63,614 nt of DNA, filler included, from Octopus bimaculoides (GCF_001194135.2; 6 parts of 6 records of this genome joined end to end with filler, not necessarily neighbours in it), one strand, 5' to 3'. Counted from the whole stretch's first letter, positions 17,804 to 25,517 are shown. Numbers and translations are program-made. The notes: a model not told the origin generated them from the letters alone.

Positions 17804-18020
17804 CATCATCTCATCTCATTTTCTTCGCCTTCTTAATCCTGTGAGAGTCGTGGGTGCAGAATCCTTAAGTACGCCGCCTTCCATCGGGTCCTGTCAGAAA
17901 CAACCATCTCCATTCGACCCGGCTGGATCCTCAAGCGAGATCAACCGAACTCATGGATATCATCCAACCATCTTGTTCCTGGTCTACTCTGTGTTTCTTG
18001 CCAGTTGCTTTTGCCCATAA
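17804..18020 (-). mobile_element. RTE-like LINE 3' end
   Basis: RPGTRWLDDIHEFG..DRTRWKAA C-terminal motif followed by a short-repeat tail (gagatgagatgatg). Confidence 0.65.
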
Positions 18021-18024
18021 AACC

Positions 18025-18268
18025 TGTACATTATTTCCATTTGACGGATATTTGTCCTCATCTTGTTTGTTGTTAACACAACGTTTCGGCTGATATACCC
18101 TCCAACCTTCATCAGGTGTCTTGGGGAAAATTTCGAACCTGGGTTCTCATTCCTAAGGTATTTTTCGATGTTGTTATCATTATTATTATTATTCAGGTCA
18201 CTGCCTGGAATCGAACTCGGAATCTTGGGGTTAGTAGCCCACGCTCTTTACCACTATGCCATATGGCC
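18025..18268 (-). mobile_element. tRNA-headed SINE family H (head + (TAA)n + hammerhead-bearing 3' body), copy 1
   Basis: On minus: A box 'tggcatagtgg', B box 'gagttcgattcc', short TAA array, 'catcgaaaaataccttaggaatgagaacccaggttcgaaat', HHR, tail 'aacaaacaagatgaggacaaatatccgtcaaatg'. Homologous copies at 24586-24864 and 60346-60528. Confidence 0.88.
18075..18120 (-). ncRNA. Minimal type I hammerhead ribozyme, core intact
   Basis: GACAC-CUGAUGA-A-GGUUG-GAGGGUAUAU-CAGCC-GAAA-C-GUU-GUGUU: stem I 5 bp, stem II 5 bp, palindromic stem III ACGU, GUU triplet; predicted cleavage between 18080 and 18079. Confidence 0.82.
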
Positions 18269-18849
18269 CATCAACCCTGTTCAGCAATTGTTTACCGAGA
18301 CATGCTTACCACATGTCCTCAGTATTGAAGCTGTGATCTCTCAAACTCGGGTTTTGAAATATAATTTCAAAAATTCATTCAAGGTCAAAGATATATTAGG
18401 GAGCCAGATCTAATCGAGTTAATCATCCATTAGTCGATTCAATCAGCCATTGTATTAAATGAATGGCATTTATTTTATCGACCAAGGAGGAATAAAAAGA
18501 AAAGCAGATTCTGGGAAGATGTGAACTTGAATAAAAAAACGAAAAACAAAAACAAATGCGGCGTTTTTATTTTTTTATTTTACTGAGACTTTCTACAGTT
18601 TTTGAAACAAACCGACCCGTTTTTAGAGCTAAATAATGGAAAAAGAGAAAAAATATCAACGCTGCTAACTTGGAAAGAAAGATTAGTTGATTAAATCGAC
18701 GGATAGTCTATTTTATCGAACTTTAGACGAATAAAAGACAAAAGTAGCCTCACGTATGTGATCGGGGTAATACGTGCCGTTCCAAGAGACATTAGAATAT
18801 ATAATGTAAGTGAATGCATGTATATTTATGGATGGTTGCATGTATTCTT

Positions 18850-19135
18850 TCGTTTCCTTTTACTTCCTTCAGTCGTTTGACTACGGCCATGCTGGAGCGC
18901 CGACTCGAGAAGTATTAGTCGAACAAATCGACCACGGATTTGTTTATTAAACCTAGTACTTATACTGCCAAATTCTTTTGCTGAAACGATAAGTTCCTGG
19001 GACGTAACAAGTAACAAATCTTTGGTCGGACTGAGGTTATAGTTGAAGACACTTGCCGAATGTGCCGCCCAGTGGGACTGAACCCAGAACGATGTAGTTG
19101 GTGAGCAAGCTTCTTATCACACCGCCTTGTGCCTA
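18850..19135 (-). mobile_element. SINE family B, internally deleted
   Basis: Tail 'cagtcgtttgactacggccatgctggagc' and head 'cagtgggactgaacccagaac..ggtgagcaagcttcttatcac'. Confidence 0.85.
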
Positions 19136-19254
19136 GAGTATAAAAGATTATTTGCTATCAGAGTGTAAAGGCCTGTGATTAAATACCACAAAGCAGGCGT
19201 GTATGTAAACAAGATTGTACGTATGCATGCATGAATGTATGTACGTATATATAT

Positions 19255-19257
19255 ATG

Positions 19258-19346
<89 letters not shown>

Positions 19347-19395: not shown

Positions 19396-19978
19396 TGCTT
19401 AATTACAAACACACACACACTCAATATCGTATACACGTTTTGTGAACGCAATGTGTCCTTACGAGACAGAAAAAAATGGCAGTCTTTCGAAATATTTGTA
19501 AATACTCACTGTACCATTATAATTGTTATCAATTGGATAAGCGAATGTGAATCAGTCTTCCATGTTCTTTACTGGAAAGAAAAAACAGCATTTCTACGGT
19601 TCTAGATTAATCTTTATTAATATTGCAGAAGCCAATGATCCTGTAGCGACGGAATAAATCTCATTTAAAGTCAGAGTTTAACCTATAGGGTTCACGATGG
19701 ATTATAGTTGATCTTTACACTACAGATGAGACATAAACAGCTGCAGAACAGTTGACCTTTGTTTCAGTGATAATCTTTCGTTTCTCGTCGTAGCAAATAA
19801 TGTCAGCTTCAGGCCTTTAGGCTTTGTTGGTCTCTACTGTTGTTATTTTATCCTAAGTCAATTCCTTTGATTCTGAAAACGGCATTCTCACTATTTACCT
19901 TATGTATATATAAAGTATTAGTTAATATCTTATTATCCAATGCGTAGGTGTTTACAATTGTATATTTCTGAGATGTCC

Positions 19979-20119
19979 GAAGGCATTGCAATCCCAGAGT
20001 CACAGACAGTGAGGGACTTGAGGATCAGTATGTGTAATGATCCATCATTTCAAAAGCACATTATCAAGATGGCAGCGAAGTGCCGAGAACTGGCAGGCTG
20101 GATTTTAAAGTCCTTCTAG
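19979..20119 (+). mobile_element. CR1/L2-type LINE RT C-terminal fragment
   Basis: EGIAIPESQTVRDLRISMCNDPSFQKHIIKMAAKCRELAGWILKSF*, matching the 'V.DLG...D..F..HI......L.GWI.R.F' motif. Confidence 0.7.
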
Positions 20120-20163
20120 ATAAAAGATCAAGAAGTCGTGTTGACGAAGTGGAAGAATCACAA

Positions 20164-20204
20164 GACACCTGAAGAAGACTGGATTGTACAACAGCTGAAA
20201 CGTA
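20164..20204 (+). ncRNA. Degenerate minimal type I hammerhead related to family H
   Basis: GACAC-CUGAAGA-A-GACUG-(10 nt)-CAGCU-GAAA-C-GUA; core intact, stem II mismatched, stem I partner lost; downstream 'aacaataagatcaggac' homologous to the family H tail. Confidence 0.55.
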
Positions 20205-20454
20205 ACGAAAGCAACAATAAGATCAGGACCTCAGTCTGATTAATGTAAACAGTATGTAGGTTTTATTATAGAAAGTGTGATAAGATTTCAAGGATATTTA
20301 GCTGTTATTTCTCGCAGAATGAGTGACTATCTAGACGTAGCCGAATATTGTTTCTAAGCAATTTGATCATCACAATGATGATTACGGTGAATTAAGTTGT
20401 TTGCTGTTATTGGTAGTAGCAACAGTGGCTTTATTGCTGGTCACAGTTTTGGCG

Positions 20455-20475
20455 GTGATGGTGGTGGTGGTGATA

Positions 20476-20541
<66 letters not shown>

Positions 20542-20580
20542 GTGATGATGATGATGATGATGGAGGTGATGATGATGCTG
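20455..20580. repeat. (GAT)n trinucleotide repeat
   Basis: Read directly. Confidence 0.9.
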
Positions 20581-21067
20581 CTGACGATGAATGTTTTAGA
20601 CTTGTAAAAGCACATTTGAAGTTAATGCCTTCCCTTTTATGTTAGAATTTAAAAAATAAACATGTACATTTGGTAGTAAAGTCTCTTGTGTTCTGTTATT
20701 TTATTCTACTTATTTATTTTCGACTGTATTTTTTTTTTTTTGTATATTTAAACATTGGCATTTTGGAAAGATAAAGGTTTTTCGCAACCGCAATTTCCGT
20801 TTTTGTTTACATATAATCAAACATAAATTTAAGAGATTTGACTGTTATTTCTAACATGTGGAGAGACCTTCAAGTTTTTACTGCATTTACTGGCTGAAGA
20901 TCAGCTACGCCTGCACAAATGAGCGAAAATGTTTCAAAACATCCGGAATATTAATGTGAATTTGAGAAGAGTGGGAGGGGTTTTATTATTATTTTTTTTA
21001 AATTGAAATTTTAGGAAAAAAAGATTTTTAAGAATCATATTACCCACATTCTTCTATGCGGAATTCA

Positions 21068-22985: not shown

Positions 22986-23149
22986 TGAGCTGTAGCGGTG
23001 GTGGGTGGAATATATACTGGATCATGGTAATAAGTTACGTTAATAGATCAAAATGCCATTACAAAACAATTCCATAGCAACTTGTGATGGAAATCATTAT
23101 CTCAGGAACAATGATGCCAGCAAGATGTCAGCATCAATTTTCATTCATC

Positions 23150-23167
23150 GTTACTCATCACCATCGC

Positions 23168-23218
<51 letters not shown>

Positions 23219-23781
23219 AATTATTATTATCATCACCATCAACAATGTGATCATAATCAGTCATTGGCACAAACTTTCATTGTCATCACATCGTTGTCGA
23301 CCGCGTAGTCGTCGTCGCCGTCGAGACCATTGTCATCAACATCGTCACCGTCGTCATCATTGTTGTCATCATCATCATCATCAACAACAACAACAACAAC
23401 ATCGTCACCATCATCGTCATCATCATCGTTATCATCACTGTCATCTTTAAAATTATGTAAAAATCATTCTAGCATTTTATAAGCCACAAAACTGTTCAAT
23501 TTTATCATCATCATTATCATCATCGCTATCGTCATCATGGCTCTCATTATTATTATCGCTGTCGTCGTCATGGTTGTCATCATCATCGTCATCATCATCA
23601 TCATTATCGCCATCAACATCCTCATCATCATCATTATCATCCCCTACATCATCACCGTCGTCATCATCATCATCATTATCATTATTATCGTCATCCTCAT
23701 CATCGTCGTCGTTATCATCATCATCCACATCATCATCGTCATCATCATCGCCGTCATCGCCATCGTTGCCATCATCAACAT

Positions 23782-23814
<33 letters not shown>

Positions 23815-23830
23815 TATCATCATCATCATT
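23150..23830. repeat. Long degenerate (CAT)n/(CGT)n/(CAA)n trinucleotide field
   Basis: Read directly; yields poly-H/D/I/S ORFs in several frames. Confidence 0.9.
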
Positions 23831-24384
23831 GTAGTTTTCGTCACTATCATGATGAACATTTTGACGATCCATCCACATCGTGGAAAGCTATTCTTGCACA
23901 TAATAACCCACAAAACAAATTTAATGGAGTTGCAGCGGAACTGTGTTAATGACCAGGCCGCAGTTGTGCGACGAAAATATTGATACCTCATGAAATTAAT
24001 TTGGAGTGAAATTAACAGTCTTGTGTGTTATTAAATTACCACAATGATTCTTCAACGATGTTGTTGCTACAATTTTCAACACAAGATCTCTAACCACGTG
24101 ACAACTCCAAAATTATGATAATCGTCACTAATTAACACATATGCCCATCGAAGTCATCGTGATAGTCAACTTGATCAAGATGATGATGATGAACATCGTT
24201 ATTGCCATGGTCGTCGAGCTTCTCTTTGTCCACGTCCTGATCTTCCTCCTCAACTCAACAGCACCTCGAGGCGTCGCTGGAGTGAAGGTCGTCGGTAAAT
24301 AGAAATCTCGACCAATGAAACCCATCTTCTCCACACGAAACGAAAGATCATGTACTCCAATATGGTTAGACGTTTTTCAGGATA

Positions 24385-24585: not shown

Positions 24586-24733
24586 CATTATTTACAATAT
24601 TTACATTATTTACATTTGACGCATATTTGTCCTCATCTTGTTATTAACACAACGTTTCGGCTGATATACCCGCCAGCCTTCATGTTTTGCGGAAATTTCG
24701 AACCTGGGTTCCCATTCCTAAGGTATTTTTCGA

Positions 24734-24798
<65 letters not shown>

Positions 24799-24864
24799 TC
24801 ACTGCTTGGAATAGCACTCGGAATCTTGATGTTTATAGCCGGCGCTCTTAACCACTACGCCATA
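24586..24864 (-). mobile_element. SINE family H, copy 2 (long TAA array, HHR core deleted)
   Basis: Head 'tatggcgtagtggttaagagcgccggctataaacatcaagattccgagtgctattcc', about 19 TAA units, same body; stems II and III perfect but 'cctga' of the CUGAUGA core is missing. Confidence 0.88.
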
Positions 24865-24865
24865 G

Positions 24866-24952
24866 CAACAAAGAAGATGAAGACGAATATCCGTCAAATG
24901 TAAACAATGTAAATAATGCACATAATTCCTCATCTCTTAAATATAGAACTGT
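24866..24952 (+). mobile_element. Inverted copy of the family H 3' tail
   Basis: 'caacaaagaagatgaagacgaatatccgtcaaatgtaaacaatgtaaataatg' is the family H tail in opposite orientation, abutting the head of copy 2. Confidence 0.8.
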
Positions 24953-25250: not shown

Positions 25251-25285
25251 TGTACAACTCTTCTTATTCTCCTTTTCTATGTTTT

Positions 25286-25517
25286 TATTATTATTATTGT
25301 TCAGTAGTTTTATTTTTATAACGTGCTTTCACTTCACTACCGAGCGCAGCTCTGTGTGCCTTGGGTATGTGCTGTGGTTTGTTGTGGTGCTCTTATGTTT
25401 ACCGTATTGAAAGTGTTTTGCGTAGAATGTGTGCAGTACCCAGTAGTATAATTTTCTGTATGTTATATATATTTGTAAGTCCTGGTGTTTTTGTTATGTA
25501 TTTGTCTGAATATTTTT
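25286..25517 (-). mobile_element. R4/Dong-like non-LTR element 3' end
   Basis: Minus: KYITKTPGLTNIYNIQKIILLGTAHILRKTLSIR*, about 100 nt of 3' UTR, ending in (TAA)4. Confidence 0.8.

What the first reader, a model, noticed from the sequence alone, without database searches (positions are those of the whole stretch)
18025..18268. tRNA-headed SINE carrying an intact minimal hammerhead ribozyme (retrozyme-like system)
Seen: on the minus strand a Pol III-type head (A box TGGCATAGTGG, B box GAGTTCGATTCC), a TAA array, a short linker, then GACAC-CUGAUGA-A-GGUUG-(10 nt)-CAGCC-GAAA-C-GUU/GUGUU at 18120-18075. All core nucleotides, stem I and stem II are present; stem III is the loopless palindrome ACGU. 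The same unit occurs three times in this window. Established: such loopless palindromic-stem-III type I HHRs occur in Penelope-like elements and cleave as dimers, and Schistosoma Sm-alpha is a tRNA-related SINE with an HHR. Inference: this is a high-copy cephalopod SINE whose 3' body derives from a PLE pseudo-LTR and whose transcript may self-cleave (3' end formation or circularisation) and be mobilised by a PLE. I do not know of it being described, but could not search. Caveat: this copy has a T4 run at 18127-18130 that might stop Pol III before the HHR; copies 2 and 3 have only T3.
Basis: partly seen in the sequence, partly recalled or inferred. Interest (0 to 1): 0.9.

Follow-up and report, generated by a model that had tools for sequence, protein, structure and literature searches.

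The report
Cephalopod SINE carrying a minimal hammerhead
This is one copy of a short octopus "jumping" element that pairs a tRNA-like promoter with a stripped-down self-cutting RNA motif of the Penelope-retrotransposon type; squids carry the same motif block, so it has been kept a long time, but whether it cuts is untested.

Summary
The motif is real. Window 18120-18075 (minus strand) is a complete Penelope-type minimal type-I hammerhead: CUGAUGA/GAAA core, 6-bp helix II with G10.1-C11.1, an unpaired A after A9, a loopless ACGU helix III and a 5-bp helix I. None of 1000 shuffles of the window produced one. It lies in a 238-bp tRNA-headed SINE copy (18265-18028) bounded by a 15-bp target-site duplication. 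A second full copy (24866-24586) has lost CUGA by deletion. Two 5'-truncated copies (20161-20263; 24863-24919) keep only the 3' part. The ~125-nt 3' module (hammerhead plus tail) also occurs in a decapodiform squid assembly (~78% identical over the aligned 123 nt), behind a different tRNA-like head and often as 2-5 tandem ~129-nt units. The consensus keeps every core nucleotide, and helix II shows a U-A to C-G swap. Inverted 5'-truncated copies abut the head in 3 of 6 full copies, and partial tandems occur; both are Penelope-style insertion features. Against this: no Penelope ORF sharing the module was found, no insertion end matches the cleavage site, Rfam models miss the motif, and cleavage is untested. 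Verdict: a genuine hammerhead-bearing SINE lineage of cephalopods and a new variant of known kinds. The retrozyme/circularisation reading is unsupported for the octopus copy.

The parts
18266..18280 (-). 5' target-site duplication ACAGGGTTGATGGGC
   Evidence: 13 of 15 identical to 18027-18013, sitting exactly at both element ends. My rough estimate of the chance probability is ~4e-4.
18194..18265 (-). tRNA-like Pol III head (A box 18261-18251, B box 18218-18207)
   Evidence: The A box is an exact consensus match and occurs only at the two heads. B box. The Rfam tRNA model matches weakly, 14.1 bits over model positions 8-63. ARAGORN is negative.
18170..18193 (-). internal (AAT)n microsatellite plus GATAACAAC linker
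   Evidence: (AAT)5 here versus about (AAT)21 at the same junction in copy 2.
18028..18152 (-). conserved 3' module (pre-hammerhead segment, hammerhead, tail), shared with squid elements
   Evidence: Local alignment to L005 9761-9900 scores 99, against 27 +/- 5 for shuffles (0 of 500 reach it). blastn gives 81-83% identity.
18127..18130 (-). T4 run 7 nt upstream of helix I; a possible Pol III stop specific to this copy
   Evidence: Copy 2 has TTT here and squid copies have none.
18075..18120 (-). intact minimal type-I hammerhead; predicted cut between 18080 and 18079
   Evidence: 0 of 1000 shuffles. Pair counts across 20 homologous units.
18028..18074 (-). A-rich 3' tail downstream of the cut site, ending in AATGTAAAT-like repeats
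   Evidence: Retained in all copies, including the 5'-truncated ones. Homologous to the squid tail.
18013..18027 (-). 3' target-site duplication ACAGGTTTTATGGGC
24586..24866 (-). second full SINE copy; hammerhead inactivated (CCUGA deleted, remnant at 24683-24638)
   Evidence: 88% identical to copy 1 over 236 aligned nt; flanks unrelated.
24863..24919 (+). inverted, 5'-truncated tail-only copy abutting the 5' end of copy 2
   Evidence: nhmmer E=4.3e-9; alignments. It starts 8-11 nt downstream of the position equivalent to the cut site.
20161..20263 (+). 5'-truncated, diverged copy: hammerhead core plus tail, no head, helix I 3' strand lost
   Evidence: nhmmer E=2.1e-7; sequence; alignment.

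Best explanation
Window 18265-18028 (minus strand) is an old, probably dead insertion of a cephalopod SINE.

Build of the element:
- a tRNA-like internal Pol III promoter (A and B boxes);
- an (AAT)n stretch;
- a ~125-nt 3' module made of a short leader, a Penelope-type minimal type-I hammerhead and a ~50-nt A-rich tail.

Shown:
- The element moved as one unit (target-site duplication; same head/body junction in independent copies).
- Reverse transcription starts at the tail, because 5'-truncated copies keep it.
- The hammerhead is kept in the lineage's source copies. The consensus is intact in both octopus and squid, with a compensatory change in helix II, while individual genomic copies decay.

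Inferred:
- The 3' module is, or mimics, the 3' end (pseudo-LTR part) of a Penelope-like element.
- The module is what a Penelope reverse transcriptase/GIY-YIG endonuclease recognises. The SINE would then be mobilised in trans by Penelope-like elements rather than by a LINE.
- This would explain the inverted 5'-truncated copies abutting the head and the partial tandems of the module.
- Helix III is only the ACGU palindrome, so the ribozyme can be active only when two motifs pair. That can happen between tandem units in squid, or between two transcripts in octopus.
- The most likely catalytic job is cutting multimeric or read-through transcripts into units. It does not make the 3' end of the retrotransposition template.
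For: 1. The motif is complete and beyond chance. It also shows features the search descriptor does not force but which PMC4209133 lists for Penelope hammerheads: a nucleotide between A9 and G10.1, a G10.1-C11.1 pair, palindromic 15.2-16.2, and helix I of 4-5 bp.
2. SINE status: A box only at the two heads; 15-bp target-site duplication; copies 1 and 2 are 88% identical with flanks at chance similarity. O. bimaculoides ORFs P0128 (head-(AAT)n-body junction) and P0137 (hammerhead plus tail) are further copies in another species.
3. Conservation: 17 homologous hammerhead units in five loci of ENA assembly ERZ21867824, whose rhodopsin is 94% identical to Loligo forbesii. Over all 20 units the consensus is ACAC-CUGAAGA-A-GGCCGG-AGGACAUA-UCGGCC-GAAA-CG-UU-GUGG. 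Helix II is 92% paired, with C-G (11), U-A (3) and U-G (3) at one pair. The ACGU palindrome is 97.5% kept. Pairing is 76%, against at most 48% when partners are slid.
4. The module alignment between octopus and squid scores 99 against 27 +/- 5 for shuffles, while the two heads are not similar (score 20 against 18 +/- 3).
5. Penelope-style architecture: an inverted 5'-truncated copy abuts the head in octopus copy 2, L004 and L005 (3 of 6 full copies). L007 15914-15996 holds inverted tail pairs. Squid loci hold tandems of 2-5 units of ~129 nt. This matches Fig. 2 of PMC8557442.
6. The sense strand is A-rich and T-poor. The 819-nt L005 array has no T4 run, which is compatible with Pol III read-through.
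Against: - No Penelope RT/GIY-YIG ORF exists in the window or in the ORFs I scanned in L004-L006, so the autonomous partner is unidentified.
- Helix I is only 3 bp in the squid consensus and 48% paired overall.
- The covariation score is reached by 30 of 500 shuffles, and the key compensatory swap is essentially one event between two lineages.
- The predicted double-hammerhead dimer (-17.5 kcal/mol) is less stable than two misfolded monomers (2 x -10.2 kcal/mol). The module is not unusually structured (z -0.5 to -0.9).
- Minimal hammerheads cleave poorly in vitro (PMC4209133).
- No copy begins or ends at the cut site.
- Rfam hammerhead models give nothing.
- Only 1 of 3 hammerhead units in the window is intact, and copy 1 has a T4 run upstream of it.
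- There are 0 copies in the rhodopsin loci of three Octopus species, so copy number is unknown.
Confidence: 0.6

Rival explanations
1. It is an ordinary LINE-dependent tRNA-SINE. The 3' module would be a LINE 3'-UTR stem-loop recognised by a LINE reverse transcriptase, and the hammerhead likeness would be structural only and never catalytic.
For: The layout is the classical SINE one of head, body and tail. LINE fragments lie next to copy 1 and copy 3. No footprint of cleavage appears at any insertion end. The dimer is not favoured thermodynamically. No Penelope element was found.
Against: All 13 core nucleotides and the ACGU palindrome are kept in the consensus of two lineages, while the loop and flanks change. 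The inverted tail-plus-full-copy structures cannot arise by twin priming on one RNA and are typical of Penelope-like elements (PMC8557442). Similarity between the sequences downstream of copies 1 and 2 is at chance level, so the adjacent LINE pieces are not part of the element.
Confidence: 0.17
2. It is a chance juxtaposition. An unrelated tRNA-SINE with an (AAT)n tail would lie next to a solo, 5'-truncated Penelope pseudo-LTR fragment that landed in the microsatellite.
For: Penelope-like elements prefer microsatellite targets (PMC8557442). An (AAT)n stretch separates head and module. Headless module copies exist (20161-20263; 24863-24919). The octopus and squid heads are not homologous.
Against: The target-site duplication encloses head plus module in copy 1. 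Copy 2 and the O. bimaculoides ORF P0128 have the same head-(AAT)n-body junction. Squid copies also join a tRNA-like head to the module. This remains plausible as the origin of the family, but not as the explanation of this copy.
Confidence: 0.05
3. It is a Pol III-driven retrozyme. Transcripts would be cut at two hammerheads, ligated into small circular RNAs by a tRNA ligase, and copied by rolling-circle reverse transcription, which would generate the tandem arrays.
For: Squid loci carry 2-5 tandem ~129-nt units, each with a hammerhead, behind a Pol III-type head and without T4 runs. Metazoan retrozymes are proposed to be non-autonomous Penelope derivatives (PMC7229834; bioRxiv 10.64898/2026.07.22.740005).
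Against: The octopus copies have a single hammerhead each. The unit is not highly self-paired, unlike retrozyme RNAs (z -0.9). The hammerhead is the minimal type, not the canonical type I. Array ends do not fall at cut sites. No RNA data were available.
Confidence: 0.15

Closest known systems
Minimal type-I hammerheads of Penelope-like elements (Cervera & de la Pena 2014, PMC4209133; Lunse, Weinberg & Breaker 2017, known to me only through citations)
   Same: Core boxes; large helix II with G10.1-C11.1; an unpaired nucleotide after A9; helix III reduced to a palindrome so that only dimers can be active; short helix I; thousands of dispersed solo copies reported in metazoan genomes; tandem and inverted arrangements.
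   Different: Here the motif is joined to a tRNA-like Pol III head and is bounded with it by a target-site duplication. The dispersed solo motifs were previously assumed to be truncated Penelope elements. No flanking RT/GIY-YIG ORF is seen.
Sm-alpha / Sj-alpha SINE-like elements of Schistosoma (Ferbeyre et al. 1998; Laha et al. 2000; as summarised in PMC6765202)
   Same: A short non-coding retroposon with Pol III promoter boxes plus a type-I hammerhead, found both dispersed and in tandem.
   Different: As I recall, Sm-alpha carries a canonical hammerhead with a real helix III and loop-loop contacts that cleaves efficiently. The cephalopod motif is the minimal, loopless Penelope type. There is no sequence relationship, and the host phylum differs.
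Metazoan non-LTR retrozymes (Cervera & de la Pena 2020, PMC7229834)
   Same: Non-autonomous and non-coding, with type-I hammerheads and tandem units. They co-occur with Penelope-like elements and are proposed to depend on them.
   Different: Retrozymes are 170-400-nt tandem units with canonical hammerheads, and their RNAs are highly self-paired circles. No Pol III head is described for them. The octopus element is monomeric, has a head and a target-site duplication, and is not unusually structured.
Classical tRNA-SINE/LINE partnerships and conserved-domain SINE superfamilies (CORE, V, Deu, Ceph, Meta; PMC5786205, PMC4824008)
   Same: Head-body-tail build; a central/3' block conserved across distant hosts while heads are exchanged.
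   Different: The conserved block here is a hammerhead plus tail with Penelope-type insertion structures, not a LINE 5'/3' fragment. It does not contain the RTE-like Ceph-domain string quoted in PMC5786205. I could not compare it with the OK, OR1, OR2 or Ceph-SINE consensus sequences.

Membership tests
Hammerhead ribozyme, minimal type I (Penelope-type min-HHR) | Conserved core C3 U4 G5 A6 N7 G8 A9 ... G12 A13 A14 and a non-G at position 17 | tested here: met
   CUGAUGA at 18115-18109, GAAA at 18087-18084, U17 at 18080. The consensus of 20 units keeps all of these.
Hammerhead ribozyme, minimal type I (Penelope-type min-HHR) | Helix II closed by G10.1-C11.1, preceded by one unpaired nucleotide | tested here: met
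   A at 18108, then GGUUGG/UCAGCC. Helix II is 92% paired over 20 units, with G-C at 10.1-11.1 in 16 of 20.
Hammerhead ribozyme, minimal type I (Penelope-type min-HHR) | Helix III reduced to a palindromic 15.1-16.1 / 15.2-16.2 without a loop | tested here: met
   ACGU at 18084-18081; kept in 97.5% of cells.
Hammerhead ribozyme, minimal type I (Penelope-type min-HHR) | Helix I of about 4-5 bp flanking the motif | tested here: inconclusive
   5 bp in octopus copy 1, but only 3 bp (CAC/GUG) in the squid consensus; 48% of cells paired.
Hammerhead ribozyme, minimal type I (Penelope-type min-HHR) | Location in the pseudo-LTR of an element encoding RT plus GIY-YIG endonuclease | tested here: not met
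   No such ORF in the window or in the ORFs scanned in L004-L006. Only ~170 kb of cephalopod DNA could be reached, so this says little about the genome.
Hammerhead ribozyme, minimal type I (Penelope-type min-HHR) | Self-cleavage, as a dimer | not testable with these tools
   Only energies are available: double-hammerhead -17.5 kcal/mol against 2 x -10.2 kcal/mol for the monomer fold.
Rfam hammerhead families (Hammerhead_1, Hammerhead_3, HH9, HH10, II) | Score at or above the gathering threshold of a curated covariance model | tested here: not met
   No hit even at E<=10 in a 321-nt search or in the squid array. As a positive control, a canonical hammerhead in L005 scores 25.8 bits, E=0.0014. 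This outcome is expected, since the models require a helix III.
tRNA-derived SINE | 5' internal Pol III promoter (A and B boxes) of tRNA origin | tested here: met
   The A box is exact and the B box has 1 mismatch, with about 33 nt between the boxes. tRNA origin itself is only weakly supported (Rfam 14 bits; ARAGORN none).
tRNA-derived SINE | Short, non-coding, dispersed copies with different flanks and target-site duplications | tested here: met
   238 and 281 bp; 15-bp target-site duplication at copy 1; flanks unrelated. Further copies occur in O. bimaculoides.
tRNA-derived SINE | 3' end shared with an autonomous partner | not testable with these tools
   No cephalopod genome could be searched as DNA. 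Scans of the metagenome, viral and prokaryote collections were empty.
Metazoan non-LTR retrozyme | Tandem units, each with a type-I hammerhead, so that two cuts release a monomer | tested here: not met
   Single hammerhead per octopus copy; copies 1 and 2 lie 6.5 kb apart. The feature is met only in the squid loci.
Metazoan non-LTR retrozyme | Highly self-paired unit RNA expressed as a small circle | tested here: inconclusive
   Unit folding z-scores are -0.9 (squid) and -0.5 (octopus), so the unit is not unusually self-paired. Expression and circularity are not testable here.

The most novel reading that the evidence does not exclude
Cephalopods may carry an ancient SINE superfamily, shared by octopods and decapodiforms, whose conserved domain is a Penelope-type minimal hammerhead plus tail. 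Different Pol III heads would have captured this domain repeatedly, and Penelope-like elements would mobilise it. If so, many of the thousands of 'orphan' minimal hammerheads scattered in animal genomes would be Pol III-driven SINEs rather than truncated Penelope elements. The tandem squid form would be a Pol III-transcribed, retrozyme-like source of ~129-nt RNAs.
Probability: 0.35. Interest if true: 0.7.

Novelty: new variant of a known kind. Interest (0 to 1): 0.55.

Why it matters
The role of minimal hammerheads in Penelope-like elements is openly described as unknown (PMC7761336, PMC8557442). It is also unclear what the thousands of dispersed solo motifs are. A SINE that borrows just the hammerhead-plus-tail block marks that block as the part needed for mobilisation, in the same way that SINE tails defined LINE recognition sites.

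That gives a compact, testable substrate of about 125 nt. It can be used for Penelope reverse-transcriptase binding and priming assays, and for asking whether cleavage, dimerisation or mere structure is what is selected.

It would also add a retroelement class other than LINEs as a driver of SINE amplification in genomes where SINEs make up more than 10% of the DNA (O. vulgaris, PMC13282606).

Tried and rejected
- Rfam at gathering and at E<=10 found no hammerhead. The many mir-297/mir-3149 'hits' are microsatellites.
- Exact-pattern scans of metagenome (2), viral (1) and prokaryote-genome (1) collections with conserved 21-23-mers returned 0 hits.
- Word-indexed protein searches with the antisense SINE ORF and with the LINE-like fragment returned nothing.
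- Exact look-ups of three window ORFs found none on record, so the window's source record stays unidentified.
- I fetched the rhodopsin loci of O. vulgaris, O. bimaculoides and O. sinensis as unbiased octopus DNA. They hold no copy and no minimal hammerhead.
- I considered that the element extends 3' into a LINE-like 'RPGTRWLDDI' frame seen after copy 1. I rejected this because the downstream similarity between copies 1 and 2 is at chance level (score 28 against 26 +/- 5).
- I considered that the octopus and squid heads are homologous. This is not supported.
- A Pfam scan of window ORFs and of squid ORFs near the copies found no RT or GIY-YIG domain, only a weak zf-RVT (LINE-type) hit in L005.
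- Cofolding does not predict the double hammerhead. This is uninformative, since any hairpin homodimer wins in such a calculation.
- Literature searches, by keyword and by sequence string, found no description of a tRNA-headed SINE with a minimal hammerhead in cephalopods. Lunse et al. 2017 and Ohshima & Okada 1994 could not be read. Repbase, Dfam and SINEBase could not be consulted.

Full report
**What is in the sequence**

Read on the minus strand, the region runs in this order:
- a 15-bp direct repeat, ACAGGGTTGATGGGC (18280-18266);
- a tRNA-like head (18265-18194);
- (AAT)5 plus a short linker (18193-18170);
- a body;
- the hammerhead (18120-18075);
- an A-rich tail (18074-18028);
- the same 15-mer again with two mismatches (18027-18013).

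Head details:
- The A box TGGCATAGTGG (18261-18251) is an exact TRGCNNAGTGG match. That consensus occurs only twice in the window, both times at heads of this element, against 0.17 expected.
- The B box GAGTTCGATTCC lies at 18218-18207.
- ARAGORN calls no tRNA. The Rfam tRNA model reaches only 14 bits.
- So the head is a degenerate tRNA derivative, not a tRNA gene.

**The hammerhead**

The motif reads GACAC-CUGAUGA-A-GGUUGG-AGGGUAUA-UCAGCC-GAAA-CG-U-U|GUGUU. It has:
- all core positions;
- a 6-bp helix II closed by G10.1-C11.1;
- one unpaired A between A9 and G10.1;
- a helix III that is only the palindrome ACGU;
- a 5-bp helix I.

A descriptor I wrote for this architecture finds exactly this one site in the window. 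It found none in 1000 dinucleotide-preserving shuffles under strict settings and 3 in 1000 under relaxed settings.

The features that my descriptor does not force are the ones Cervera & de la Pena list as recurrent in minimal hammerheads of Penelope-like elements (PMC4209133). These are the extra nucleotide, the G10.1-C11.1 pair, the palindromic 15.2-16.2 and the short helix I.

No Rfam hammerhead model matches, even at E<=10 in a 321-nt search. The same tool does pick up a canonical hammerhead elsewhere. The negative result therefore reflects the missing helix III, as expected for this class.

**Copies in the window**

nhmmer and blastn find four members.

| Copy | Coordinates | Strand | State |
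|---|---|---|---|
| 1 | 18265-18028 | - | Full copy, described above |
| 2 | 24866-24586 | - | Full copy, hammerhead inactivated |
| 3 | 20161-20263 | + | 5'-truncated, no head |
| Tail-only | 24863-24919 | + | Inverted; abuts the 5' end of copy 2 |

- Copy 2 has the same head, about 21 AAT repeats and the same body. It is 88% identical to copy 1 over 236 aligned bases, and its flanks are unrelated. A 5-nt deletion has removed CCUGA, so its hammerhead is dead.
- Copy 3 begins 4 nt before helix I. It keeps CUGAAGA...GAAAC and the tail. It has a mismatch in helix II and no helix I 3' strand.
Just one hammerhead in the window is intact. By parsimony, however, the ancestor of the three had the full motif: copies 1 and 3 share GACAC-CUGA, and copies 1 and 2 share GUGUU.
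- The T4 run at 18130-18127 is specific to copy 1. Copy 2 has T3 at that position.

**Reaching other cephalopod sequence**

- DNA-pattern scans of the available collections were empty.
- A squid rhodopsin query retrieved Octopus rhodopsins. From these I fetched the loci of O. vulgaris, O. bimaculoides and O. sinensis (L001-L003).
- These loci share other SINE families with the window at 83-88% identity, which places the window in an octopus. They contain no copy of this element and no minimal hammerhead. 'High copy' is therefore unproven.
- A profile of the sense-frame translations of copies 1 and 2, run against 1.8 billion proteins, gave 18 hits.
  - Two are O. bimaculoides ORFs. P0128 spans the head-(AAT)n-body junction. 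P0137 (XP_052830334.1) spans the hammerhead and tail. Both are further copies in another species.
  - Fourteen of the others carry the peptide KHLKKAGGHIGRNVVEITIKMKTIVRKPLMIK, mostly repeated in tandem. This back-translates to a hammerhead plus tail. One hit, P0141 (1059 aa), looks like an unrelated repeat protein.

**The squid loci**

Four of those hits were traced to ENA assembly ERZ21867824. The same assembly also encodes a rhodopsin 94% identical to that of Loligo forbesii, so it holds a decapodiform genome. The rhodopsin locus gave a fifth stretch of that genome.

In these five loci (L004-L008) the element is built as follows:
- a tRNA-like head, GGACACATAGCGTAACGG...GGTTCAATCCTGAC;
- a body;
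- one to five tandem ~129-nt units, each with the hammerhead ACAC-CUGAAGA-A-GGCCGG-AGGACAUA-UCGGCC-GAAA-CG-UU-GUGG and a tail.

Two copies lie in the unbiased rhodopsin locus L006.

The octopus and squid 3' modules align over about 125 nt with a score of 99, against 27 +/- 5 for shuffles. The two heads do not align (score 20 against 18 +/- 3). The conserved, exchangeable part is therefore the hammerhead-plus-tail block.

**Is the structure maintained?**

I aligned 20 units, 3 from octopus and 17 from squid (A3).

| Element | Result |
|---|---|
| CUGANGA box | Intact in 15 of 20 units |
| GAAA box | Intact in 19 of 20 units |
| Consensus | Complete core |
| Helix II | 92% paired |
| Helix II, pair 10.4-11.4 | C-G 11, U-A 3, U-G 3; the U-A pairs are the octopus lineage |
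| ACGU palindrome | 97.5% kept |
| Overall pairing | 76%, against 13-48% when the 3' partners are slid |
| Helix I | Weak: 3 bp in squid, 48% paired overall |
| Covariation score | Reached by 30 of 500 shuffles |

The compensatory swap amounts to about one event. The case therefore rests mainly on the conserved core and helix II across two deep lineages, not on statistics of covariation.

**How it moves**

- The 5'-truncated copies keep the tail, so reverse transcription is primed at the tail, as in target-primed reverse transcription.
- Three of six head-bearing copies have an inverted, 5'-truncated copy abutting or overlapping the head by a few bases. These are octopus copy 2, L004 and L005. 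L007 holds an inverted pair of tail fragments, and the module is often in partial tandem.
- A tail present twice in opposite orientation cannot come from twin priming on one RNA. [quoted passage not shown]
- Together with the hammerhead type, this makes a Penelope-like partner the best guess. It remains an inference, because no RT/GIY-YIG ORF was seen in the window or in the squid ORFs I scanned.

**What the ribozyme does**

- None of the ~10 copies with an intact 3' end stops at GUU. All keep the tail beyond the cut site.
- The 5' ends of truncated copies are scattered.
- Cleavage therefore does not create the ends of the template that gets inserted.
- Circularisation needs two cuts in one RNA. 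That is possible in squid arrays, where the 819-nt array in L005 has no T4 run. It is not possible in monomeric octopus copies.
- The unit is not unusually self-paired (z -0.5 to -0.9), unlike retrozyme RNAs.
- The predicted double hammerhead (-17.5 kcal/mol) is not favoured over two misfolded monomers. Published minimal hammerheads cleave poorly in vitro.
- My best reading is that the block is kept because it is the Penelope recognition/priming element, with unit-length processing of multimers as the likely catalytic role. Pure structural mimicry cannot be excluded.

**Comparison with what is known**

- Minimal Penelope hammerheads and their thousands of dispersed solo copies are known (PMC4209133; PMC7761336).
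- SINE-like elements with a Pol III promoter and a canonical hammerhead are known in Schistosoma (PMC6765202).
- Metazoan retrozymes are proposed to be non-autonomous Penelope derivatives (PMC7229834; bioRxiv 2026).
- In the searchable literature I found no description of a tRNA-headed SINE, bounded by a target-site duplication, built on the minimal Penelope-type hammerhead, nor of its conservation between octopods and decapodiforms.
- The SINE itself may already be catalogued in Repbase, Dfam or SINEBase without the ribozyme being noted. I could not check this.
- I file it as a new variant of known kinds, of moderate interest.

Noticed in passing
L005 5225-5340 (minus strand): A second, different hammerhead-bearing short element in the squid-like assembly. 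A tRNA-like fragment with a B box (GGGTTTCGATCCCAGC) is followed by a canonical-looking hammerhead, CCACA-CUGAUGA-GUUC-UGAUA-GAAC-GAAA-C-AGAUCU-G-UC|UGUGG. The element is flanked by (AC)n and (CT)n. Rfam Hammerhead_3 gives 25.8 bits, E=0.0014.
   Followed up: partly
window 17860-18010 (minus strand): Directly 3' of SINE copy 1 lies a frame reading ..SRPGTRWLDDIHEF..VSDRTRWKAAY... From my own knowledge it resembles the C-terminal end of LINE ORF2 proteins. It has no Pfam hit and is not part of the SINE.
   Followed up: partly
window 19925-20150 (plus strand): Directly 5' of the truncated copy 3 lies a frame reading ..TVRDLRISMCNDPSFQKHIIKMAAKCRELAGWILKSF*IKDQEVVL.. It resembles the mid-part of a LINE reverse transcriptase. 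That judgement rests on my own knowledge; there is no database or Pfam hit.
   Followed up: partly
window 4640-4838, 8881-9079, 19014-19126, 1729-1811: Several copies of another abundant SINE family that ends in (TG)n/(TA)n microsatellites. They match O. vulgaris L001 at 83-88% identity, which is the main evidence that the window is octopus DNA.
   Followed up: partly
window 3108-3178, 5330-5490, 19215-19300: The Rfam mir-297, mir-3149, mir-466 and mir-1277 matches (E down to 6e-9, all below gathering score) are (TG)n/(TA)n microsatellites, not microRNA genes.
   Followed up: yes
window 12160-12420; 20435-20590 and 23140-23880: There is a long (AAT)n array, and long (GAT)n/(ATC)n arrays in opposite orientation that form 130-156-nt imperfect inverted repeats about 3 kb apart. 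They create spurious D-rich and I-rich ORFs.
   Followed up: no
L006 4380-4465: One squid SINE copy carries an ~85-nt near-perfect hairpin inside its body (GGGAGCCAACATGGATCTTCGCAACCACGTCC-TTTA-GGACGTGGTTGCGAAGATCCGTGTTGGCTCCC). This is an inverted duplication of the body segment.
   Followed up: no
L004-L008 (ENA ERZ21867824): An assembly held among metagenome assemblies contains long contigs (35-450 kb) of a decapodiform cephalopod genome. Its rhodopsin is 94% identical to that of Loligo forbesii.
   Followed up: partly
window 25273-25353 (minus strand): A weak nhmmer match (E=0.015) to the T-arm/(AAT)n part of the SINE, with no hammerhead downstream. It could be an older, decayed relative or chance.
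   Followed up: no
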